This document shows positions 8,248 to 64,000 of a stretch of 64,000 nt of DNA, one piece after another. Under the pieces are notes generated by a model. That model did not search any database. It was given only the letters and a program-made list of their open reading frames with translations, and was not told the origin of the DNA. A program made the position numbers and the translations under genes. Origin of the DNA: Diadema antillarum (lineage: Eukaryota); contig NW_027271020.1 in NCBI RefSeq assembly GCF_040938485.1, forward strand, positions 2,914,001 through 2,978,000. Direction: 5' to 3'. Every line of letters begins with the position of its first letter. The first letter of the stretch is position 1.

Positions 8248-9331
8248 TTAGCCATGGATGCCATGGATACCATGGAAGAACATACCTATCATGTAAATAG
8301 ATCTGAAATTGGCCATGAGCCATTACAAATTCTATAACTCATTACATGTCAAAGTTCAGTAATGTTTGATGATTTACCTTCGATTTACGATCTAAGTATA
8401 TCATATTCAAAACTGTACATTCTTCGTATATGATTTCACTGTAATTGTGTTGTTTTGTTTGGCCAACTAAATGCTACCTCTAATCATAAAAATCACATCT
8501 GCGGAACAAGATCGAGTAGAACGTTTATCTAAATATCTATTTTCTTTATACTGAATCATATTGTCAATCATTCGCGAGTCTCCCCCCCCCCCCAGCTTAC
8601 TCAGTATCTTCAGTCACTCTGCACGATAACAATCGTCAGATTGTAGCTCTGTACAGGAGGGAAAGAGGAATCCATTTGGAGGTAAGATGTCTTGAATCAT
8701 TGGAATTAACATAAATGATATGACATGAAAGGAAATATCATTATATAAAGTGGTACACAAAATAGTAATATATCAAATATTCATTATAAAACTGTACATC
8801 GAACTGGAAAAAAAAAAACACCAGACAATCACATTCTTTCTCATGCGTAGGAAATATGTACAAGATAAAGGATGCAAGATAGTTACTAAAGACAGTGCTG
8901 TATCTGTTAATATTTCGAAATATCAGCGAAGTGAAGGAATTGCCGAGTTTCACAAATATCTCCAGAACATGTTAAAATTTCCCTTGTAAAGAAAACCATT
9001 ACGAGGGCGAAGATGAATTTCAAACAGTTTCCATTGCGGTATTTTACTTCTTCGCAAACACATTAGGCTGTCTCTGGCAACTCTAGAACCTGTCGTGGCT
9101 CTGATCATTGCTGTAATTAGTGGAAAGGACATGGGTCAATGTCAGAACAGCATCATTAATAAATACTACCAGATTCCTTTTATTTTCCTTCATCTATATT
9201 TGCTCGTGAATGTGAAGCTTCATGACCTCGGCGAAACACATGATTGAACATTTTCTTCGTATAATTACCCCCCTCAAAACAAACAAACAAACAAACAAAC
9301 AAACAAAGAAGGAGAAGCAGCAAGTAAAGAT

Positions 9332-11369: not shown

Positions 11370-12719
11370 CTACAATTTCTGCGTTGTCTCAACAGACTGT
11401 GCATCGTTCGGAATGCTGCAGCTGTTGTTAGAGTGCTTATCATCTTCTTGATTCCGAAGCCGTCTTTTCTCCGTCCACCATTGCCCTGCTGTCAAGCCAA
11501 CGAGACTGCCGACGATTATGAATGCTCCAGATATAGTAAAACCATTTGGGACCGTACCGAATATGAGAAAGTCGAGTATGAAGGTGAAGAAGACATCGGT
11601 TGTCCTGATCAAGGAAACGGTAGTAGCCGTCTCATACCTCATGGAGATGACGAAGGTAACTTGGAATGCGAAGGAGAATAGGGCATTGCAGATTAGAAAG
11701 ATTCGGCTCCTCCCACAAGGGGGAATTACCCAGTCTCCCAGCCCTGTGGTCATGGATCCACTGACCATCATCCCTACGATGCAGAGGGTGACCAACTGGA
11801 CCAGTGGGTGAACTCGGTAAGCTGCTATCTTCCGAAGAGAAACATAGATCGTCCCTATAAGGACAGCGCTGATGAGACAGAGGGTCGGTCCGAGAAAGGA
11901 GGACGATGACTCTTCGCCGCCGAAGAGGAATGGTGGTTGGATGACGAGGAACACTCCGCCAATCGTCGTTAGGGAGAAGATCACGTCAAAGATAGTGCAC
12001 GCGTCGCTGAGGAGGACACAGCTGAACAACCCCGTGAAGATTGGCGCACTGTAAGTAATGGCCTTGGCGCTGGCCACTGGCATAATCTGGTAAGCAAAGA
12101 ACACTAAGCAATTCACCGTGGATCCTATGACCGACCTTAAAATAATTAGAAACCACGCCTCCCTCGGGTACTTGAATGAGGCTTTCTGCCACGTGAGTAG
12201 CGGTATGGAGAACAGCAACTGCATGTACATTTGATTGAACACTATCTGATTCGAACTGACTGACTCTCCTATAAGAACAACCAACGTACTACAGATCGAC
12301 AACATAATTGTTGAAAACAGAGCGTAAATTTTGCCTTTCAGCCGAATCTGAGAGCAAGAAGTTCCTAAATATTTGCTTCTATTGTTTGATGCCAGAGAAC
12401 TGATCTCTGACGGAGCTGTCTCTTCTTTCACATTCAAAAACTCTCTGTCCTTGCTGCTGAATTCTGGATGGGTCGTCGTAATATTAGTCACTGGGTCATT
12501 ATGGTCGTCGCTGGCGGTTTCATAACCCTGGTTGACGAAAGCATTACTATTAAAGCCACTGCCTTCATCTGTGCCTTTCGCTGTGTGTGAATCGTAATGG
12601 CGTGTATTGCCGGAGTCCTCAAGTGTTTGAGAGGAAGTCGATCGCAAAGATTCGGAACTTGTTCCGCCATCTCGATTTATTTCTTGATGAGATCTGCTTT
12701 CCCGGACTGGATCCATCAT
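11370..12719 (-). CDS. SLC35G1-like: SLC35G-like EamA/DMT transporter, subtype A copy 2 (449 aa, intact, no coding introns)
   Basis: First ATG at 12719 (MMDPVRES; the track's start at 12743 is a TTG). Long acidic N-terminus followed by about 10 hydrophobic segments in two EamA-like repeats (LRSVIGS, MPVASAKAITYSAPIF, VIQPPFLFG, FLIFGTVP). Confidence 0.9.
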   Translation of the reverse strand: MMDPVRESRSHQEINRDGGTSSESLRSTSSQTLEDSGNTRHYDSHTAKGTDEGSGFNSNAFVNQGYETASDDHNDPVTNITTTHPEFSSKDREFLNVKEETAPSEISSLASNNRSKYLGTSCSQIRLKGKIYALFSTIMLSICSTLVVLIGESVSSNQIVFNQMYMQLLFSIPLLTWQKASFKYPREAWFLIILRSVIGSTVNCLVFFAYQIMPVASAKAITYSAPIFTGLFSCVLLSDACTIFDVIFSLTTIGGVFLVIQPPFLFGGEESSSSFLGPTLCLISAVLIGTIYVSLRKIAAYRVHPLVQLVTLCIVGMMVSGSMTTGLGDWVIPPCGRSRIFLICNALFSFAFQVTFVISMRYETATTVSLIRTTDVFFTFILDFLIFGTVPNGFTISGAFIIVGSLVGLTAGQWWTEKRRLRNQEDDKHSNNSCSIPNDAQSVETTQKL

Positions 12720-13781
12720 TTCAGAATCTGCATAGGCTGCCAAGCTAAGAATGACAGAGCAATCACAAGCAAAGTAATGAATAAAACATAATTTCTGCCT
12801 AAGGAAGTATGAATCACAAGAATATAGATGTAAGTGTAGGTGAATGCGATTAGGAGGTGGTATTGATTAGCAAATTTCACATCATTTTTATACTGAAAGT
12901 CAATTTAACGTAACTGCTAGGTGTACCAATAGTACTACATCGTTTGTATGATCAAAGGACACTAAAACCAAACACCGTGTTTTAATTAAATTTCAGCCAT
13001 TGCCTTCTCCGACACGGTGCACGCACGACGCTCAAGATTGTTATAGACAAGTTTTCCGTCATTCACTTTGATGTCCGAGGACATTCTCAACAGGACACTA
13101 AGTAACAAGGGCTGTATCAACGGTGTCTCCGTAACAACAGAGGTTACCCCTTTGTAATTGTACATTTTTTCCCATTGGCGAAAATGTTCGTTTTGATAAA
13201 TAATATACCATACAAAACGAAAAAAAAACGTTGGCATTCAAACACAAGTTATATTTTTCTTTTTAATGTAAGACAAAAATATCTAACTAGAAATGTTTTT
13301 ATTTTCAAAAAGATTTGTGATCATCACAAAATTGATGTTCTAAAGCAAAATTTGACATTCGAAATTCGGAAGACTGTACAAATTGTGTCCTCCGTTTTAT
13401 ATAGGAGTACTTAGACTGTTAAGGATATATCAGAATACATTTTGCAGAAGGTATTTCCATTGGGGGAAGGTTTCGAATCTATTTAATAACGAGTGAACAT
13501 GTAATGTTAGCAAGTTTGTCGTCGAAGATAATTCTTGCCTCAAAGTATGTTGTTAGTGTTCAATAGTTAAATGCTTCAATTGTCTTTATTTTCAAAAGCA
13601 TAAAAGCAGGTATATAATTAATTATACAGGCACCTTCACCTTACGGTCCATTTGCTCTCAGCACTGTTTTGCGCAAACAGATATTTCTTTGGAGCTGTAG
13701 GTGTTAAGTTGTTTTGAAATGTGTATATGAAGGAAATTGTGTTCTAGGCTTATTGTAGATTACAAAATTAACATACAAAAA

Positions 13782-21578: not shown

Positions 21579-22808
21579 TTAAATACCAGTGTCTTCTGAA
21601 ACGATACTACTACATCCGTCATCATTCTGACAACTCAGTTCTTCGCTGTCATCTTCATCCGTTTTCTTCCTTGTGACAAACCATTGTTTTCCTACAATTC
21701 CTACAAAGCTCGCTATGATAAGCACAGTTCCTAACAGCGATACCCAATTCGGAACGACACCGAAGAACACAAATTCTAGCACAAATGAAAACAGGACGTC
21801 GCTGGAGTGATAGAGGGACACATTGGGGGCCCTCTCGTACTTCAGGGCGAGATAGATGAGTATTTGGGAGAAAAAGTTGATGAGGCCGTTAGCAATTAGT
21901 GCAAAGCGATCCAGCCCACATTTAGGAAGAGTCCACTGGTTTGGGAAGGACGTAAAGAGGGCAGTGAAACCGGTAGCGGTCAGAGAATATATGGTCAGCA
22001 TTCCTAGAGACGAGATACCCATGGAGGCAAGTTTTCGCTGGAGGATGAGAATGATCGCGGAGAGAAAGGCTGAAATCAAGCAAATGATTGCACCAAGGAC
22101 GCTGGAGCTGGATGCTGAAGTCACCGAATCGAGAGCATCGAAAAGGAACGGGGGCTGCGCTACCAGCATGACACCCGTTAGGGTCACCAGTCCGAGGACG
22201 ACATCGAGGAAGGAGCATGCCTCTTTGAGAAGCAACCAGCTGAGGAGGCCAGCGAAGATAGGACAGCTGTACATGATGGCTTTCGCGTTGGCCACCGGCA
22301 TGAGGGTGTATGCGATGAAGACAAGTGAAGTGTTCAGAGACCCGAGGATGGAGCGTAAAAGCAGGAGGGCATACCCTTGTCGAGTATAATTGAAAGATAG
22401 CTGCTTCCAAGCAGCGATTGGAAGACAAACTACAAGCTGCATCATCATCCGGGTGAAGGCAACCTCGTTAGGGCTAATGTAGACTGTCAAATGTCGCACG
22501 GACATCGCTGCAAGCGAAATGATGGCGGCCGAAGTCAGAGTATACCAAACACCTTTCCAACTCAACACCACCTCCCAGCAGTTCGATATTGCCCCTCTGC
22601 TAACTGCCTTTTCTGCCTCCACTTCTTTTTCCGACGTACTTGGCATTTGTTCATTTTCATGAACGCGTATTCCTCTGTCGTTACAACAAAATGCATTCCT
22701 ACTAAAGTCACATGATTCAGCACCGTTTCCAGTTTCGATTTTCTCTCGCAAACTGTCATCATCCTGCTCACTCTGTCGTTTCGCACTTGCACAGTTGTTG
22801 TCAGCCAT
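21579..22808 (-). CDS. SLC35G1-like: SLC35G-like EamA/DMT transporter, subtype B copy 1 (409 aa, intact)
   Basis: ATG-to-TAA ORF with NEVAFTR, LRSILGS, MPVANAKAIMYSCPIFAGLLSWLLLKE, VAQPPFLF and FVFFGVVP motifs and about 10 TM segments. Confidence 0.92.
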   Translation of the reverse strand: MADNNCASAKRQSEQDDDSLREKIETGNGAESCDFSRNAFCCNDRGIRVHENEQMPSTSEKEVEAEKAVSRGAISNCWEVVLSWKGVWYTLTSAAIISLAAMSVRHLTVYISPNEVAFTRMMMQLVVCLPIAAWKQLSFNYTRQGYALLLLRSILGSLNTSLVFIAYTLMPVANAKAIMYSCPIFAGLLSWLLLKEACSFLDVVLGLVTLTGVMLVAQPPFLFDALDSVTSASSSSVLGAIICLISAFLSAIILILQRKLASMGISSLGMLTIYSLTATGFTALFTSFPNQWTLPKCGLDRFALIANGLINFFSQILIYLALKYERAPNVSLYHSSDVLFSFVLEFVFFGVVPNWVSLLGTVLIIASFVGIVGKQWFVTRKKTDEDDSEELSCQNDDGCSSIVSEDTGI

Positions 22809-49251: not shown

Positions 49252-50445
49252 TTAGCTCACATCACTCTCACTTGCGGCGACGCTGCACCCGTCAGGTTTG
49301 TCGTCAGAAAGCCTCTTTTTAGAGGGAGGCGACTTTTTGCCAGTAATGCCAAGGAACCCTGTCACAATCAAAGCAGTTCCTATAATTGTGATGTAATTGG
49401 GGACGGTCCCAAAAAGAAAGTATTCGAAGATAAAGGCAAACATGATGTCGATCGAATGGATTAATGTCACTTTCGCAGCCGGCTGAGATTTGAGGGCTAT
49501 GAAGAATAAAACCTGCGAGAGGAAATTGCAAATGCCGTTCAATATGATTGAGATGCGATCCAAGCCGCATCCAGGGATTGACCATTGATTGGTGGCGGAA
49601 GTCACTACTGCGGTGAAGCACATGCCGAACGAGGAGTAGAGGGTAAGCATGACCATTGGGGTCATGCCGTACAACCCGAGTTTCCGCAAGATGATGATGA
49701 TTACGGAGTTTAAGAAAGCTGCCAGGACACTGAGCGAGGCGCCCAGGATGCTGGAACTGGACTCAGGATCCCCCTGCTCCGAGAGATCAAAGAGGAAAGA
49801 GGGCTGCGCCACCAGAAACACTCCTGTTAGCATCACCAGGCCTAGGACGGCGTCCAGAATCGAAAACTTCTCCTTCAGGAGCAGCCAACCCAAGAAACCG
49901 GTGAAAACGGGACTGCAGTATTGTATCGCCTTCGCGTTGGCCACAGGCATGATTTGGTACGTGTAGAAAATGACAATTGTGTTAGTGGACCCCAGGATGG
50001 CGCGCAAGAGTAAGAGGAAGTAAGCCGCTCGTGAATATTTGAAGGATGGTCGTTGAAAGACTATGATAGGAACACAAATTATAAGCTGGATGGCAAAGCG
50101 GGTGAAAGCTATCTCATTTGCTGACACTGAACCCCCAAGCTGCTTGACGGTCATGCCAGAAAAGGCTATGACGAGGGCTGACAAGACAGTAAACCAGATG
50201 CCCCTTTGTCTCAACAGCATGTCCTTACGTTGTAGCGATTTGTCATTCTGGTGCATTTCACTGTTGTTGCTCTTTGTGTCTACATGCACATCCTCAGTAG
50301 TTGTGTCGCCTTCAAACGCGTCATTGTCCAAGCCAGCTCCTGCCCCACCACCACAAGATCGCCGATGGAGACCTACTACACTGTTCATGTCGGGATCAGT
50401 CCAATCTCCCATCGTCTCCTGCCCACCATGCACACTTTCAGCCAT
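49252..50445 (-). CDS. SLC35G1-like: SLC35G-like EamA/DMT transporter, subtype C copy 3 (397 aa, intact)
   Basis: Complete ORF, highly similar to C1. Confidence 0.92.
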   Translation of the reverse strand: MAESVHGGQETMGDWTDPDMNSVVGLHRRSCGGGAGAGLDNDAFEGDTTTEDVHVDTKSNNSEMHQNDKSLQRKDMLLRQRGIWFTVLSALVIAFSGMTVKQLGGSVSANEIAFTRFAIQLIICVPIIVFQRPSFKYSRAAYFLLLLRAILGSTNTIVIFYTYQIMPVANAKAIQYCSPVFTGFLGWLLLKEKFSILDAVLGLVMLTGVFLVAQPSFLFDLSEQGDPESSSSILGASLSVLAAFLNSVIIIILRKLGLYGMTPMVMLTLYSSFGMCFTAVVTSATNQWSIPGCGLDRISIILNGICNFLSQVLFFIALKSQPAAKVTLIHSIDIMFAFIFEYFLFGTVPNYITIIGTALIVTGFLGITGKKSPPSKKRLSDDKPDGCSVAASESDVS

Positions 50446-56927: not shown

Positions 56928-57411
56928 CTGTAAAAGAAAACTATGTAGCATGAAAGATGAATATGAGAGTAAAGCATGATTTACAATTGATGACAAGATG
57001 ACAAGATTGTTGAAATTACATATTCACCGGAAGAATATTAAAAGCAGTGTGTAAAGTGATGTGTTACGTTTTCCATCATTTTCCTAAAGATCCTGTGAAT
57101 ACGATCGAGTGCCCTTTTCAGGCACATAATGCTTCCAGTGAATATCTTTATAAAGAAATGTATTAAATATGACACGGCAATAAGGAAAATAGATGAAATC
57201 GTTTGCTACAGTGCGCCACTATTGTACGTTCTTTCTCAGTTATTACGCAACATACCTACACTAAAATGCTCTTTTTACTCTTATAAAAGAACTAATATTT
57301 AGAGTGTGATTTCTTAGAATATGATAAATGAAGTAAACATATCTAAATGTAAATGCGTAGTACATATTGTCAATGTACATGTCTTCAGCCCATGCGAACG
57401 TTTTAATATAC

Positions 57412-57545
57412 CTTTTTTATACAAAGAAGTCGCCGTCGTCCTGCATACAAGACGCACACGGTGATGGCGAGGACGAAGAGAACAGCTGTCAGTGCGTAAG
57501 ATGTCGATGGTTGTCGAAGAACTCCTCGATGACGGTCATAATTTC
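57412..57545 (-). CDS. Transmembrane exon of the Ig-like membrane protein
   Basis: cattttag|GA AAT...AAG|gtatat. Encodes NYDRHRGVLRQPSTSYALTAVLFVLAITVCVLYAGRRRLLCIKK: a hydrophobic helix plus basic stop-transfer, with a phase-1 start. Confidence 0.75.
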
Positions 57546-58017: not shown

Positions 58018-58810
58018 TATTAGGAGGAACAATACATATATACTTCGTGGACGTGCGGAAAATAGATTCGATTATGGAAAATAGTGATCCACTAAACAGC
58101 AAAGCTTGTGGGACGTGGATCGCTAGATAAATAATGAGTAAATAATATATTATTCGAGGGTTTTTTTATAGTTATCATATTTGATATAGATTATTTCAAT
58201 CATTTGTAAAAAAATATATATATGTAGTTATATTGAGATACGCAGGTCGGGGAAAAAAATATCAATGTTAATGCCCGGACACTGTTCACTGAACCACGTG
58301 TACCGGGAAAATATGACAAGGACAAGACACTCGTACGCACATTACCCACACACATATAAGACGCGAGACAGTACCGAGAGGAGAGAAGACGGTAACAATA
58401 CAAGTCTACAAAGAACAAAAGACAGGAAAGGAAGAGGAGAGAAGAAAGAAGAGAGGTCTGCATACAGACCACGCAAAGTGCTGCGACATCAGGACAGGTG
58501 AAAGCTCAAGCATGAATTAAAACAATTTAAATTATCTAAAATTATAAGTAGAGAATAGATATTTTCTGAATTTGCATTTAAATATGACGAATTTGGGGGA
58601 ATCTTTTAAACTATTATCTAGATTATTCCAAAGTTTGGGTCCGATATAAAGAAATGTACTTTGGGCATATGCGGTTCTCATTAATGGAAGATGAAATTCA
58701 TCGGATCGTCGCGTGGGATAATTATGTACATGACTGTTTCGATGAAATAAGTCATGAAATATTTTAGGTAAAAAATTACTGTTATTACTGTTAGAAATAC
58801 CATTGCACAA
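57788..58810 (-). mobile_element. CR1/Crack-like LINE 3' fragment in an intron
   Basis: LPKIFHDLFHRNSHVHNYPTR...LPLMRTAYAQSTFLYIGPKLWNNL...FKCKFRKYL (58532-58810), then a 3'UTR ending AATAAA and (TTGAA)n at about 57790-57825. Confidence 0.8.
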
Positions 58811-59578: not shown

Positions 59579-59857
59579 CTCTTGGGCAAAATTCTTCCAC
59601 GGTCGTCGTTGATCCCATGACATTTTCTCCTCGGCAGGTGATATTCGTGCAGCTTGCAGGGCGTGGCGATATCGTAAATGATGGCGAAGAGCTTGCTTTC
59701 GAGAGAAGCACACCCCCAACGATGGTGTCAAAGCTGCGAAGAGGTGGATAGGGTTGGTCGGTTTCATTCACGAGGCATGACACGGTGACAGAGGGTTGAC
59801 CATAGTTGTCCAAATGCTCGTCGAACACGACTTCGATGATGTCATCGGATGGCTTAG
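59579..59857 (-). CDS. Ig-like domain exon (membrane-proximal)
   Basis: 279 bp, phase 1-1, AG/GT bounded. KPSDDIIEVVFDEH...VTVSCLV...SPRPASCTNITCRGENVMGSTTTVEEFCPR. Confidence 0.8.
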
Positions 59858-60500: not shown

Positions 60501-60923
60501 TTTTTGGGCAGTAGGTTCTCACAGACGTAGTGGTTCCGTAACTGTTCACTCCAATGCACGTTATGTTAGTGCACGATTCAGGTCGGGGTGCCAATGTGAC
60601 GGATGCCGAGCGTGACGAAGAAATCGTTTCATTGTCTGTCTTGATGACGTAAGTGTCGATAGGAGGGAATGGCTGGTGATTAAATGTCACGTGACAGGTT
60701 ATTATCAGGTCAATTTGTTGAAACACTTCTCCGCTACATTCCCGGACTCCATCAGTGTCTTTTATAAACTCTCCATTGCCCTCCGTAATCTCGCCATTGC
60801 CTTCGAAAAGCACACTGCCACTCTTTGTAGTGGCACCTGTATCTTCACTTGCTTCACTATTTTCATCCAAGAGAAATCCTGATTCTACGATTTCGCGGTT
60901 TGCCGTCACATTTTCTCCAGGTT
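60501..60923 (-). CDS. Exon: acidic linker plus C-terminal part of an Ig-like domain
   Basis: 423 bp, phase 1-1, donor GTAAGT. ...IITCHVTFNHQPFPPIDTYVI...APRPESCTNITCIGVNSYGTTTSVRTYCPK. Confidence 0.85.
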
Positions 60924-61216
60924 CTGTCCAGACGTGGGAAAAGGAAACCTTTGCCATTTCCAATATAATCAACAGAACGAACTTACATTTACCGACAACT
61001 TTCGCCCTTAAAATATGTCGGTATTACAAGTAGAGGAAATGTGTAGTTTTAATTTTACAAAATGAAATATTGAGGAATCGTCTTTATTTTTCCAAAATGT
61101 TCTCCACATGCGACGTCACAAACTGCAGTAGTCTTCTCATCCAACTTCGGTGGCACCGAAATTTAAAAAATCGGTAACTTTGGAACGGATTGTCTGATTT
61201 ACATCAAACATCAATT

Positions 61217-61906
61217 GTGACCGTGCACCTCAAAACAAACATAAAGTCGCACACACTGATTTTGCGTGAGGACTGAAAATAAATGAAATGGGTCAACCTA
61301 GCCGAACTTGACTTTTTCATATTTTCTGAAAGAGCGGGTCTTCTTTTACATTATGCTAAAATTTGGTATCATAAAACGGGCAGGAAAGTGTGTTTTTTTA
61401 GCAGTTTATCTCGAACAGTTTTGGTAGAATAGTGTAATTAGGTGTGCCTTTAGAATCCCTTTTTCATTTCTGAAAAACCTTGTCCACACTCTTCACTTTA
61501 AACTCTAATAACTTTTGAAAGGATAGTGCTACTGCTTTGAAAGTTGGCATTGATTATGGACAGAATGTGTTAATGAGGCATGTTTAATTTCAGTTTAATC
61601 TGATAATCCCTTCATTGTTGTTACTCTGGTGGTTTACTTCCTGTTTTTTGTCCCATTCATCGCACAGCCAGCACGGTTTGGTAAAAGATTAAGCGCTTGA
61701 ATAGACACTGTACTTCAGAGCCTCTTTTCTCAGTTCACACTTTTCCCGAGTTTGTGCTTTCTTTCCAATATTTAGATAGGTTAGGAGAGTCCATTTGATT
61801 TGAGTTATACATCATTTTAAAGCTTAAAGTCTGTTCTTTCAGAATATGGTCTAAACTAAAAATTCATGTCTGGCGACTTTTTGTTTGTTTTGAGGTGCAG
61901 GGTCAC
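61217..61906. mobile_element. 690-bp TIR element, AATT-flanked (Sola-like, tentative)
   Basis: About 34-bp TIR GTGACCGTGCACCTCAAAACAAACATAAAGTCGC / GCGACTTTTTGTTTGTTTTGAGGTGCAGGGTCAC, with AATT at 61213-61216 and 61907-61910. Other fragments of the family occur elsewhere in the window. Confidence 0.8.
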
Positions 61907-62446
61907 AATTGATATGTTCTACAGATATTGCTGCATTCACTCAGTCCACACTTGCACTTGTTATATTGATGGTGATTTTACTAACACTTTAGTAGTGAAA
62001 TTACTAACAATTATTAGTGTACATAGAGCTGAGGTTCTTACTGCATAGGCCTAGACATACAATATCTGCGACAGTGGTTTAGACAGTTAGTGTAACCACA
62101 ACACCCCTATCCTGTCCTGGATAAGCTATAGGCCCCTTGACACTAACTTCAATAGTAAATGTGTTTATCATTAATTTCCTTATTAGTTTGTATTTGCACA
62201 TTCACGTTAACAAGGTAAACAGTATCACACAGTAGGGCCTAAGTTGCAATTGCAAATCAAAAATCATCTTGCCCAGGAAAAAATCAATGATCATTCTATT
62301 TATGTTCAATATAGTACCTACATCTAACCCTCTCCATGCGGAATTATATTGCATTCTCATATGTTTGTGTGTACAATTTGTGCACATTTGACTACTTGGG
62401 AAAGAAAGGGTTAAATAATGAACAAAAATATATATATTTTCTTTAC

Positions 62447-62947
62447 CTTTCGTGACTACACCGTTGTCGTATGTAACAGTGCCATTGTCGGAGATGAATG
62501 TACCATAATTTACCGTGTCGTTGCTGTTAGCGACATCGCTATTGCCATACATGTATGTTTCCGTTCCATTGCTGTCGGTCACTGTTCCATTTACGTAGAC
62601 GAATGTACCATTGCCGTAGACGAATGTACCATTACCGTCAGTGACTGAACCATTGCCGTAGATGAATGTACCGTTGCCGTATACTAGAGTATCATTCCTG
62701 TATGTCAGCGGGTCATTGCCTTGGACGACTGTTCCATTGCTGTAGATGCCGGTGCCATTGCCGTATAAGATCATTTCATTGGTGTGGGTTACCATATCAT
62801 TGCCGTAAGTAACCGACCCATTGTCGTCTAAGAAGTCACCACTTCCCTCTACCACATCACCACTTCCCTCCGAAAATTTGTCAAGACATTTTGGTGGATG
62901 CTCAAACTCCAGGAACTGAATGTCTATGATGTCGCTTAAAGGAGGTT
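62447..62947 (-). CDS. Exon: first Ig strand, EGSGD motifs and heptad xNGTxxY repeats
   Basis: 501 bp, phase 1-1 (gatag|AA CCT ... AAA G|gtaaag). PPLSDIIDIQFLEFEHPPKCLDKFSEGSGDVVEGSGDF, followed by about 16 seven-residue repeats. Confidence 0.8.
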
Positions 62948-63842
62948 CTATCCATGGGAACAGAAATGGAATACCAAAATAGATAATAAGTTAATGCTCA
63001 CACATTATTTCTTGCACTAAAATTGAGAAACATAACATTTCAGCCTCACATGTTTATACATTATAAAATTATTGATTCTGACCTACATCCGTTTGGCCTG
63101 CTATTTATCCACGAATGCTTTTCTTTCATATTATGCGTAAAATGGGATGAATTGTAATTTTTACTTTAAGACAGTGCAGATTTCACAACGTGTAACAAAT
63201 CTTATAAATGCCAACCTTATCCCATTGTGACCTGGTGACAATGTACCTATTCGTTAACAGCTGTATTCACTGATATAATATTGACATTGATAATACCAAA
63301 CATATACATTCTGGAGGTCTCCCCTGTCAAACATTGGTAATACAAGTGTAATACTTTCATTCTAATTCATCCATGCATCGTTGTCATTTTTCGATTCATT
63401 GAATAAGATGACTTGCGATTATAGGGTAATTACTACGTAAGCACATGCATAGTGTTAATGAGTGTATGAGTACTTTTGCAAAGTTGAGAAGGGTAAATCG
63501 ATTGGCGAGCAGTATTAATGGATGTATAATAAAATTCTGCCCTCATCGAAGAAAAACAAAACAAGGATTAAAGGCGAACAGACTCAATCAGGATAACGAT
63601 CAGTAGTAACCTGAAGGCATGTTATGTGATGTAAGCAATGAAAGTCATGAGTTATCTTGAAGTGGTTCCATGTAATCATAAAAGTGTAAGGTTCCACATT
63701 GAATCCAACCCTTCGAGTATATATCCCTGTACATAATCGGTTGCATGTGATGAACTATTTCCAGAGATAATATAGATTCTCTAGAATCAAAACATGACAA
63801 TCGAAACGACATAAGGGTACCAGAAGTGTAATTAACAATAAC

Positions 63843-64000
63843 CTTGTGGACAATAAGTTGTGAGGCTCGATGTCTCCCCAAGTCCGTTGCTTCCCGTACA
63901 TGACACTTCGACGCAAAATCGAGGCCGTGGGGAAAGGCGACCGCGTGGAGTCGACGATGTAACGATTGTGACGTTATCAACTTTAATCTCGTATAACTCA
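63843..64000 (-). CDS. Ig-like domain exon (3' part; continues beyond the window)
   Basis: Manual translation ELYEIKVDNVTIVTSSTPRGRLSPRPRFCVEVSCTGSNGLGETSSLTTYCPQ, homologous to the other two modules. Phase-1 donor G|gttatt. Confidence 0.75.

What the first reader, a model, noticed from the sequence alone, without database searches (positions are those of the whole stretch)
60700..62947. A ~220-residue glycan brush inserted into one loop of an Ig-like domain
Seen: in the proximal module the first strand (DDIIEVVFDEH) and the Cys strand (SVTVSC) are 7 residues apart. In the preceding module the equivalent SDIIDIQFLEFEH and IDLIITC are about 220 residues apart across two exons. The insert has two EGSGD motifs, about 16 heptads (xNGTxxY, a 21-bp repeat) with 12 N-x-S/T sequons in register, an acidic segment, and one Cys near each end (PPKC, VREC). 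Established: acidic-flanked Ser-Gly is a glycosaminoglycan attachment signal. Inference: a disulfide-pinned beta-rich repeat displaying aligned N-glycans, evolved from a coding minisatellite, would be an unusual proteoglycan-like architecture.
Basis: partly seen in the sequence, partly recalled or inferred. Interest (0 to 1): 0.7.

Follow-up and report, generated by a model that had tools for sequence, protein, structure and literature searches.

The report
Sugar-site repeat splitting an Ig-like domain
In a sea-urchin (Diadema antillarum) cell-surface protein built from Ig-like modules, one module is split by about 220 residues of 7-residue repeats full of sugar-attachment sites; the exon is real and conserved, but the animal's other chromosome copy has lost it, so it is an unusual and probably dispensable variant of known designs.

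Summary
On the minus strand, exon A (62447-62947) starts with a canonical first strand of the gene's 4-Cys Ig-like module. It then runs into 20 heptads (21-bp unit): 2 EGSGD and 18 of the x-N-G-T type, with 12 N-x-S/T sequons, 11 in one register. Exon B (60501-60923) supplies an acidic stretch and strands B-G.

A family profile splits the same way: nodes 2-16 fall in exon A and nodes 18-91 in exon B. AlphaFold2 docks the exon-A strand onto the exon-B body (pLDDT about 90), and the whole matches Ig-C2/FN3 domains (Z about 9). The docked position partly follows my alignment.

Exon A looks like a real coding exon:
- It is 95% identical between species, against 87% for the introns.
- dN/dS is 0.35.
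- A paralog keeps the same two-exon layout.

Two things are new. Exon B carries a relic first strand of its own, so the "insert" is a truncated module exon joined to an expanded ESGD loop. The second haplotype (C25) has deleted all N-type heptads plus the splice donor, and the window haplotype has an upstream frameshift.

Glycosylation, GAG attachment and the Cys-Cys pin remain untested. This is a new variant of known kinds, of moderate interest.

The parts
63835..64000 (-). 3' part of the preceding, ordinary 4-Cys Ig-like module exon (runs off the window)
   Evidence: Open frame and module motifs. The full module is read in L001:2345-2605:-.
62447..62947 (-). Exon A (501 nt, phase 1-1): first strand of the split module, then PPKC and 20 heptads
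   Evidence: Splice sites read from the sequence. Included in D. setosum XP_072176371.1 at residues 352-505. DNA is 95.0% identical to D. setosum against 87% for the introns, and dN/dS is 0.35.
62898..62945 (-). Codons of the canonical first strand (A strand) of the split module
   Evidence: Profile nodes 2-16 match here. MAFFT aligns the first strands of all ordinary modules here. pLDDT is about 90 and the strand is docked in the AF2 model. The IIDIQF core is identical in the ortholog and in the paralog.
62448..62870 (-). 21-bp coding repeat: 2 EGSGD heptads and 18 N-type heptads; 12 sequons, 7 of them with Tyr at -2
   Evidence: Register and lag analysis. TRF period 21.
62416..62829 (.). Stretch missing from the second haplotype (C25): all N-type heptads, the GT donor and 31 bp of intron
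   Evidence: blastn of the two haplotypes and the junction read-out. D. setosum has the stretch, so the loss is derived.
60924..62446 (-). Phase-1 intron between exon A and exon B (1523 bp here, 842 bp in D. setosum)
61218..61905 (.). 688-bp MITE-like insertion in the intron, present only on this haplotype
   Evidence: Absent from C25 and from D. setosum. Has terminal inverted repeats and a duplicated CAATTG at the insertion site.
60501..60923 (-). Exon B (423 nt, phase 1-1)
   Evidence: Splice sites conserved in D. setosum. Corresponds to XP_072176371.1 residues 506-647.
60736..60921 (-). Exon B N-terminal 62 residues: relic first strand plus ESG, acidic stretch, 2 EGNGE heptads, VREC
   Evidence: Anchored gapless match to the N-termini of ordinary type-b modules, p about 0.001. 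pLDDT below 50. dN/dS about 1.1, not significant.
60502..60735 (-). Strands B-G of the split Ig-like module (4 Cys)
   Evidence: Profile nodes 18-91, 99 bits. pLDDT 88-97. dN/dS 0.12.
59579..59857 (-). Last (membrane-proximal) ordinary module exon
57410..57545 (-). Transmembrane exon (approximate ends); a short basic tail follows
   Evidence: Hydrophobic stretch followed by RRR. Matches the C-terminus of XP_072176371.1.

Best explanation
The gene encodes a single-pass cell-surface protein of Diadema antillarum. It belongs to a large family, found so far only in Diadema, built from about 90-residue 4-Cys Ig-like modules, one per phase-1 exon.

The penultimate module is a split domain. Its first strand is encoded at the start of exon A and strands B-G at the end of exon B. 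The roughly 220 residues in between hang out at the A-B corner, next to the junction with the last module and close to the membrane.

The insert grew from the native ESGD loop of this module type by expansion of a 21-bp unit. It was assembled from two module exons:
- an upstream exon that kept only its first strand plus the repeat;
- a downstream exon whose own first strand decayed.
This explains why an ordinary inter-module intron lies in the middle of a 'loop'.

The insert most likely acts as a flexible, heavily N-glycosylated and possibly GAG-bearing side arm. Most heptads read Tyr-x-Asn-Gly-Thr, an 'enhanced aromatic sequon' that favours glycosylated reverse turns. Two EGSGD units fit the acidic Ser-Gly xylosylation signal.

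Shown: the anatomy, the conservation, the split homology, the predicted docking and the haplotype loss.
Inferred: glycan and GAG occupancy, the Cys-Cys pin, and any role as a shield, spacer or ligand.
For: Anatomy and repeat register.

Split homology:
- Profile nodes 2-16 fall in exon A and nodes 18-91 in exon B.
- MAFFT places the first strands of all ordinary modules on the start of exon A, across a 220-column gap.
- AF2 of XP_072176371.1 residues 352-647 gives the exon-A strand pLDDT about 90 and the body 88-97.
- VIA-align matches whole Ig-C2/FN3 domains over model residues 5..296 (Z 9.0-9.1, rmsd 2.4-2.5, 78-79 aligned).
- In the exon-B-only control the substitute strand reaches only pLDDT about 42.

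Coding exon:
- The RefSeq model of D. setosum includes it.
- Splice sites are conserved.
- Exon A is 95% identical between species against 87% for the introns, with one 39-bp in-frame indel.
- dN/dS is 0.35, Fisher p 0.018.
- A paralog on C557/C166 keeps exon A', exon B' and both extra Cys.

Origin:
- Ordinary type-b modules carry ESGD in the same loop, and exon B's N-terminus aligns to their N-termini with p about 0.001.

Glycan logic:
- Definition of the enhanced aromatic sequon (PMC7390894).
- Acidic SG preference of xylosyltransferase, and CS sites lying in disordered regions (PMC10424144).
Against: - No RNA or protein data for this species were available here.
- The second haplotype lacks the N-type heptads and the donor. 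The window haplotype carries a +1 frameshift in an upstream module exon and a Cys-to-Tyr change in another module. One paralog allele has a nonsense codon. The brush, or the whole gene, may therefore be dispensable or decaying.
- The AF2 docking geometry is partly guided by my alignment. In the control, AF2 also put the alignment-guided segment in the first-strand place, though at low confidence.
- The insert itself is mostly below pLDDT 50.
- The N-terminal part of exon B shows no constraint (dN/dS about 1.1).
- In exon B of this gene the Ser-Gly of the heptads has become Asn-Gly, so only two GAG-type motifs remain.
Confidence: 0.55

Rival explanations
1. There are two separate units rather than a split domain. 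Exon A encodes only a flexible glyco-spacer whose leading strand is a free relic. The exon-B module is self-sufficient: it uses its own relic first strand or the SVLFE stretch, or it lacks a first strand.
For: - Exon B's N-terminus is homologous to module N-termini. In the paralog this stretch keeps a hydrophobic strand pattern.
- AF2 of exon B alone still folds the body (pLDDT 83-92) and places an internal stretch in the first-strand position.
- The C25 haplotype would have to work this way if it is functional.
Against: - The exon-A strand core is identical in ortholog and paralog, while the rest of exon A is only 48% identical.
- The exon-A strand gets pLDDT about 90. The internal substitute gets about 42 and exon B's relic strand about 30.
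- The family profile finds no first strand in exon B.
- In this gene two of the three inward-facing hydrophobic positions of the relic strand are Ala and Arg.
Confidence: 0.15
2. The brush is a neutral by-product. A slippage-prone minisatellite is tolerated in a loop of a fast-evolving, partly decaying gene, the repeat itself has no function, and this individual may carry two null alleles.
For: - The array and donor are deleted on C25.
- The window haplotype has a frameshift and a lost Cys.
- A paralog allele has a nonsense codon.
- The paralog's array is degenerate and 48% identical.
- Exon B's N-terminus has dN/dS about 1.1.
- Unrelated proteins carry similar heptad arrays.
Against: - The repeat part has dN/dS 0.31 (p 0.019). 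It is 8 points more conserved than the flanking introns between two species, and its only indel is in frame.
- The open frame, both splice sites and both extra Cys persist in the ortholog and in both paralog alleles.
Confidence: 0.2
3. The heptads fold into a compact beta-roll or single-layer beta-meander, as in the grass ice-binding protein (7-residue x-x-N-x-V-x-G units) or the TCP10/CPAP G-box. The Asn residues would be structural rather than glycosylated.
For: - Other proteins that match the array carry Pfam LbR_Ice_bind, Tcp10_C and DUF6799.
- Exon A gives a sub-threshold DUF6799 match (22.3 bits, cut-off 26.8).
- AF2 draws short hairpins with N-G turns.
Against: - pLDDT is 27-65 across the array.
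- No Pfam repeat family reaches threshold.
- The protein is extracellular, so sequons meet the oligosaccharyltransferase before folding (established knowledge).
- Thr or Ser at +2 is kept in 12 heptads, which a purely structural Asn would not require.
Confidence: 0.07

Closest known systems
Insert domain of the insulin / IGF-1 receptor FnIII-2 domain (recalled from established knowledge, not tested here)
   Same: A long (over 100 residues), largely disordered, glycosylated segment, pinned by disulfides, is inserted in one loop of an Ig-like beta-sandwich of a single-pass receptor.
   Different: That insert sits in the C-C' loop, is not a tandem repeat, carries a furin site and ligand-binding elements, and is ancient and conserved. 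Here the insert sits at the A-B corner, is a 21-bp minisatellite, is lineage-specific and is polymorphic.
Part-time proteoglycan stems such as CD44 variant exons and syndecan ectodomains (acidic Ser-Gly sites)
   Same: A membrane-proximal, low-complexity, exon-encoded segment with acidic Ser-Gly motifs and N-glycan sites. The exon is symmetric, so skipping it keeps the reading frame.
   Different: Those segments lie between domains or in a stalk, not inside a folded domain. GAG attachment is proven there and is only a motif match here (2 EGSGD units).
Engineered 'enhanced aromatic sequon' (Aro-x-Asn-Gly-Thr in a reverse turn; PMC7390894)
   Same: The heptad consensus Tyr-Gly-Asn-Gly-Thr is the five-residue form. 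Seven of the 12 sequons have Tyr at -2, and AF2 puts Asn-Gly at the hairpin turns.
   Different: The known cases are single engineered or natural turns in small domains. Here it would be a natural tandem array. Neither occupancy nor stabilisation was tested.
Other N-G-T / D-G-T heptad arrays found, e.g. P0005 (about 30 PPNGTFV units in a REJ/GPS membrane protein) and Pfam DUF6799 proteins
   Same: A 7-residue unit with Asn/Asp-Gly-Thr followed by hydrophobic residues, in an extracellular setting.
   Different: These are unrelated proteins with 25-50% identity confined to the repeat. Their arrays lie between domains, not within an Ig-like domain. This is most likely convergence.
Ordinary members of the same Diadema family (P0100-P0105, XP_ records of D. 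setosum and D. antillarum)
   Same: The same 4-Cys module, phase-1 exons, an N-terminal C2-set-like Ig domain, a transmembrane segment and a short tail. Type-b modules already have ESGD in the A-B loop.
   Different: All of their modules are contiguous, covering profile nodes 1-91 with no insert.

Membership tests
Immunoglobulin-like beta-sandwich (Ig C2 / FN3-like fold) | Seven-strand two-sheet sandwich of about 90 residues | tested here: met
   AF2 body pLDDT 88-97. VIA-align Z 9.0-9.1, rmsd 2.4-2.5, 78-79 residues aligned to whole Fc-gamma-receptor D2 domains and to FN3 domains. Z about 9 is only modestly above the tool's stated background.
Immunoglobulin superfamily (sequence family) | Significant match to an Ig profile (Pfam Ig, I-set, C2-set, Ig_2) | tested here: not met
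   Best result is Ig_2 at E 0.056-0.087, 13.5-14.1 bits against a cut-off of 27. Nothing for the split module or for P0001. PDB profile search gives only E 0.07-0.3 to DIP-alpha and CD22 Ig domains.
Immunoglobulin superfamily (sequence family) | Cys in strand B paired with Cys in strand F, and Trp in strand C | tested here: inconclusive
   Cys is invariant in the B strand and in the C-x4-C of the F region. Tyr replaces the strand-C Trp. The model coordinates cannot be read with these tools, so the pairing was not checked.
Proteoglycan core protein | Ser-Gly flanked by acidic residues in a disordered region | tested here: met
   Two EGSGD units in exon A, lying in a region of pLDDT below 50. 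Motif rule from PMC10424144. The paralog has five or more such units.
Proteoglycan core protein | A glycosaminoglycan chain actually attached | not testable with these tools
   Needs chondroitinase/heparinase sensitivity or glycoproteomics.
Mucin-like (PTS) domain | Tandem repeats rich in Pro, Thr and Ser for dense O-glycosylation | tested here: not met
   Composition of the 141-residue array: G 25, T 20, N 19, V 17, D 13, Y 12, S 9, P 1. It is N-sequon-rich, not PTS-rich.
Coding minisatellite | Tandem unit of 10-100 bp that is a multiple of 3, with length variation between alleles or species | tested here: met
   21-bp unit. A 39-bp in-frame difference from D. setosum. The C25 loss of about 414 bp has one breakpoint outside the array, so it is a deletion rather than simple slippage.
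Enhanced aromatic sequon | Aromatic residue 2-3 positions before Asn-x-Thr/Ser in a reverse turn | tested here: inconclusive
   The sequence rule is met in 7 of 12 sequons (rule from PMC7390894). The turn context is predicted only at pLDDT about 60.
Pfam DUF6799 / LbR_Ice_bind / Tcp10_C heptad-repeat folds | Profile match above the gathering score | tested here: not met
   DUF6799 scores 22.3 bits against a cut-off of 26.8. The other two are not reported at E up to 1.

The most novel reading that the evidence does not exclude
The array is a natural tandem stack of enhanced aromatic sequons. Each heptad would form a glycan-stapled N-G hairpin, so the sugars themselves hold together a beta-meander that sprouts from the corner of an Ig-like domain. 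This glycan-dependent fold would be kept as a presence/absence polymorphism in a Diadema-specific receptor family, perhaps under balancing selection in immunity or gamete recognition.
Probability: 0.1. Interest if true: 0.75.

Novelty: new variant of a known kind. Interest (0 to 1): 0.42.

Why it matters
- It is a clean natural example of how a folded domain can be split by exon-level events (truncation of one module exon plus decay of the next exon's first strand) and still, apparently, be completed in trans along the chain.
- The insert shows a 21-bp repeat turning a native ESGD loop into a dense array of optimal N-glycan sites.
- Within one animal, one haplotype has the array and the other lacks it, which makes its function directly testable.
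- The host family is large, unannotated in Pfam and so far found only in Diadema. Mass die-offs in this genus have made its cell-surface and immune repertoire a practical question.

Tried and rejected
- Pfam on every exon found nothing above threshold.
- A word-based protein search with exon B alone found nothing in its length range.
- A PDB sequence search with the module profile gave no significant match.
- Foldseek on the whole model gave only E above 0.002, because of the disordered insert. VIA-align was needed.
- I first thought exon B might be a complete, self-sufficient module. Its N-terminus does prove homologous to module N-termini. However, the family profile does not see a first strand there, AF2 does not dock it, and the exon-A strand is the conserved one. 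I therefore kept this only as a rival.
- Dispersed repeat or transposon origin of the array is rejected. At protein level the array occurs only at this gene and its paralog, on two haplotypes each.
- Assembly collapse as the cause of the C25 loss is considered unlikely. One breakpoint lies in the intron and the assembly is HiFi-based (PMC13511894), but reads were not available to check.
It was redone with references only.
Full report
**Source and setting**

The window is G000:C132:2914001-2978000. G000 has 1,754,659,819 bases. This is exactly the size that PMC13511894 gives for the Diadema antillarum assembly GCA_040938485.1. That assembly is HiFi-based, comes from one individual, and retains both haplotypes.

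Contig C25 is colinear with C132 at 96-99% identity across the whole gene. I take C132 and C25 to be the animal's two haplotypes.

The gene lies on the minus strand and runs off the high end of the window. Upstream modules were read in L009 and L010. No contig here looks human.

**The gene and its family**

The product is a chain of modules of about 90 residues, each on one phase-1 exon. Each module has:
- a first strand of the type D-I-I-x-I-x-F;
- a Cys-bearing B strand;
- a Q-P-x-P-x-I-x-x-Y stretch;
- a P-R-P-x-x-C-x4-C-x-G-x-N-x-x-G-x-T segment;
- a final C-P.

The last module is followed by a transmembrane exon and a short basic tail.

The module is very abundant in this diploid assembly: 1719 first-look candidates, of which 150 were scored, all at E of 1e-17 or better. 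Pfam sees nothing above threshold. The best result is Ig_2 at E 0.056-0.087. A module profile finds no significant PDB sequence.

A word-based search with the D. setosum ortholog found only six other proteins, all "uncharacterized protein" of D. setosum or D. antillarum. That search is limited by length and by shared words, so "Diadema only" is provisional. In those relatives every module is contiguous.

**Checking the observation**

- Exon A is 62447-62947: 501 nt, AG acceptor, AAG|GTAAAG donor, phase 1 at both ends.
- Exon B is 60501-60923: 423 nt, phase 1 at both ends.
- The first-strand motif and the Cys strand are 7 residues apart in the last module and 220 residues apart in the split one.
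- Exon A holds 20 heptads in register: 2 EGSGD and 18 N-type.
- There are 12 sequons. Eleven share the same position modulo 7; the twelfth is displaced by a 2-residue indel.
- Residue identity at lags 7, 14 and 21 is 0.40, 0.33 and 0.38, against 0.01-0.18 at all other lags.

**Is exon A a real exon?**

No RNA data could be searched here, so the evidence is indirect, but it agrees.
1. An exhaustive profile-free search with exon A returned one strong hit, P0001 (E 5e-79, 86% identity). This is XP_072176371.1 of D. setosum. Its gene model joins the preceding module to exon A and exon A to exon B at exactly the predicted junctions, and it ends in the same transmembrane segment.
2. In the D. setosum locus (L027) both acceptors and both donors are conserved.
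3. Exon A is 95.0% identical in DNA between the two species and exon B 94.3%. The three flanking intron stretches are 87.1-87.4% identical. The only gap in exon A is one 39-bp in-frame block.
4. dN/dS is 0.35 for exon A (Fisher p 0.018), 0.31 for the repeat part alone (p 0.019) and 0.12 for the exon-B body (p 4e-4). The N-terminal 60 codons of exon B show no constraint (about 1.1, not significant).
5. A paralogous gene on C557 and C166 has the same exon A' and exon B', the same donor, both extra Cys, a more degenerate array, and more EGSGE units in exon B'.

**Is the domain really split?**

- A profile built from 22 ordinary modules (91 nodes) matches exon B only with nodes 18-91 (99 bits). 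It matches exon A only with nodes 2-16. That second match is short and weak by itself, at 1-2 bits.
- MAFFT, left to itself, places the first strands of all ordinary modules on the start of exon A across a 220-column gap.
I folded the natural joined sequence P0001:352-647 with alignment A2 instead. The exon-A strand (residues 8-16) has pLDDT about 90 and the body 88-97. Nearly all of residues 28-205 are below 50.
- VIA-align superposes the model on complete Ig-C2 domains of Fc receptors and on FN3 domains over model residues 5..296. Values are Z 9.0-9.1, rmsd 2.4-2.5 and 78-79 residues aligned. The exon-A strand therefore occupies the first-strand position.
- Control: exon B alone, folded with alignment A3. 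The body still folds, at pLDDT 83-92. AF2 again puts the stretch that my alignment paired with the family's first strands into that position, but only at pLDDT about 42.

The geometry is thus partly guided by the alignment, and the difference lies in the confidence. Independent support comes from conservation. The I-I-D-I-Q-F core of the exon-A strand is identical in D. antillarum, D. setosum and both paralog alleles, while the rest of exon A is 48% identical between the paralogs.

**Origin**

- Ordinary "type-b" modules are the closest relatives of the exon-B body (about 60% identity). They carry E-S-G-D in the same A-B loop.
- The first 21 residues of exon B, anchored at the splice site and aligned without gaps, match the N-termini of type-b modules (first strand plus ESG) far better than shuffles do. 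For D. antillarum and D. setosum this is 6-7 identities and p about 0.001. For the paralog it is 5-6 identities and p 0.002.
- Both exons begin with the same five bases after similar acceptors.

The simplest reading has four steps:
1. Two adjacent module exons existed.
2. The upstream exon kept its first strand and lost its body.
3. The downstream exon's first strand decayed. In this gene Ala and Arg sit at two of its three inward-facing positions.
4. The ESGD-type 21-bp unit expanded in both exons and drifted from E-G-S-G-D/E to x-G-N-G-T.

The intron inside the "loop" is then the ordinary inter-module phase-1 intron.

**What the insert is likely to do**

- AF2 treats it as mostly disordered. 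In the most regular heptads it draws short hairpins (pLDDT about 60) whose two-residue turns are Asn-Gly.
- The consensus Tyr-Gly-Asn-Gly-Thr is the five-residue "enhanced aromatic sequon", an aromatic residue two positions before Asn-x-Thr in a reverse turn (PMC7390894). Seven of the 12 sequons have Tyr at -2.
- From general knowledge, Asn-Gly is also the most deamidation-prone dipeptide. This makes an unglycosylated array of about 15 such sites unattractive for an extracellular protein.
- The two EGSGD units fit the acidic Ser-Gly preference of xylosyltransferase. They also lie in a disordered region, as known chondroitin sulfate sites do (PMC10424144).
- In an Ig-like fold the A-B corner lies at the C-terminal end of the domain. 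The side arm would therefore emerge next to the last module, close to the membrane.
- The two extra Cys lie 4 residues after the first strand and 8 residues before the B strand, and they are conserved in three genes. A disulfide at the base of the insert is plausible. It could not be measured, because the model coordinates are not readable here.

**Polymorphism and decay**

- Haplotype C25 lacks window 62416-62829. That stretch holds all N-type heptads, the donor and 31 bp of intron. C25 keeps the acceptor, the first strand, PPKC and both EGSGD units, and its frame then closes after 9 more codons.
- D. setosum has the array, so the loss is derived.
- C25 also lacks a 688-bp MITE-like element that sits in the intron of the window haplotype. 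D. setosum lacks it too.
- The window haplotype carries a +T frameshift in an upstream module exon, relative to both C25 and D. setosum. It also has Tyr in place of the final Cys of another module.
- The C166 allele of the paralog has a TGA inside exon B'.

All module exons are symmetric, so skipping any of them keeps the frame. Whether that happens is unknown. These lesions sit beside clear between-species constraint. I read them as recent variation in a fast-turnover family, but a gene on its way out cannot be excluded.

**Comparison with what is known**

At fold level the module is an Ig-like sandwich. By sequence it is not a demonstrable member of any Pfam Ig family.
- A long glycosylated insert inside a beta-sandwich recalls the insert domain of the insulin-receptor FnIII-2 domain.
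- An exon-encoded, membrane-proximal Ser-Gly segment recalls CD44 variant exons and the syndecans.
- N-G-T and D-G-T heptad arrays recur in unrelated proteins. Examples are P0005, with about 30 PPNGTFV units; DUF6799 proteins; and a Haliotis "mucin-12-like" protein that hits the grass ice-binding beta-roll.

None of these combines a split domain, a truncated-exon origin, and an array of aromatic sequons. I file it as a new variant of known kinds.

**Limits**

- No transcript, read-level or glycan data were available.
- The AF2 alignments are shallow (25-26 rows, all from Diadema).
- The joined D. antillarum product was not built, and the D. setosum protein stood in for it.
- The RefSeq annotation of this very locus could not be reached.

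Noticed in passing
window 61218-61905: A 688-bp MITE-like element with roughly 20-bp terminal inverted repeats and a duplicated CAATTG at the insertion site. It is present on this haplotype only. The empty site is seen on C25 and in D. setosum. Diverged copies lie at C25:2134929-2135380 and L027:11231-11942.
   Followed up: partly
L009 about 5716 (C132:2983716), minus strand: A +T insertion (CAG-T-GTGACG) in an upstream module exon of the window haplotype shifts the frame to an early TGA. C25 and D. setosum lack the extra base. It is either a real null allele or a rare assembly error.
   Followed up: partly
L009 2906-3250 versus L006 1508-1768: The final conserved Cys of one module is Tyr on the window haplotype (YYPK) and Cys on C25. 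On C25 the same module has Gly in place of the first Pro of the P-R-P motif.
   Followed up: no
L015 787-1122 (C166) versus L016 2302-2721 (C557): The paralog's C166 allele has a TGA where C557 has Arg in the P-R-P motif of exon B', so one allele of the paralog is truncated.
   Followed up: no
whole genome: The 4-Cys module gives 1719 first-look candidates, many in regular tandem arrays (for example on C95, C1184, C506, C605, C778 and C750). Pfam does not recognise it. This looks like a very large Diadema-specific expansion that deserves a study of its own.
   Followed up: partly
L010 7847-8203 and 8769-9080 (minus strand): Two open frames with classical Ig features lie 10-11 kb upstream of the modules; one reaches the Pfam C2-set_2 cut-off (21.1 bits against 21). 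Family members P0100-P0104 have the same pair at their N-terminus, so these probably belong to the 5' part of this gene.
   Followed up: partly
window 11370-12743, 21579-22808, 24966-26171, 39153-40421, 49252-50445 (minus strand): A tandem cluster of intronless genes for multi-pass membrane proteins of about 400 residues, with fragmentary copies between them. One copy is interrupted by a repeat-rich insertion at about 36400-39650, already noted by the scan.
   Followed up: no
window 58532-58810 (minus strand): A 92-residue open frame resembling the C-terminal end of a retroelement protein lies in the intron between the last module exon and the transmembrane exon.
   Followed up: no
window 62205-62446 (minus strand): The exon-A reading frame stays open for 80 more codons into the intron on this haplotype. 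The stretch has no similarity to the repeat, and the frame is shifted on C25. This is probably chance.
   Followed up: partly
L027 about 9000-9030 versus L012 7648-7923: In D. setosum the module that carries the frameshift here diverges abruptly near its C-x4-C region. The RefSeq model there reads a few extra residues, and its first module is cut short. The model XP_072176371.1 is therefore probably imperfect and 5'-incomplete.
   Followed up: no
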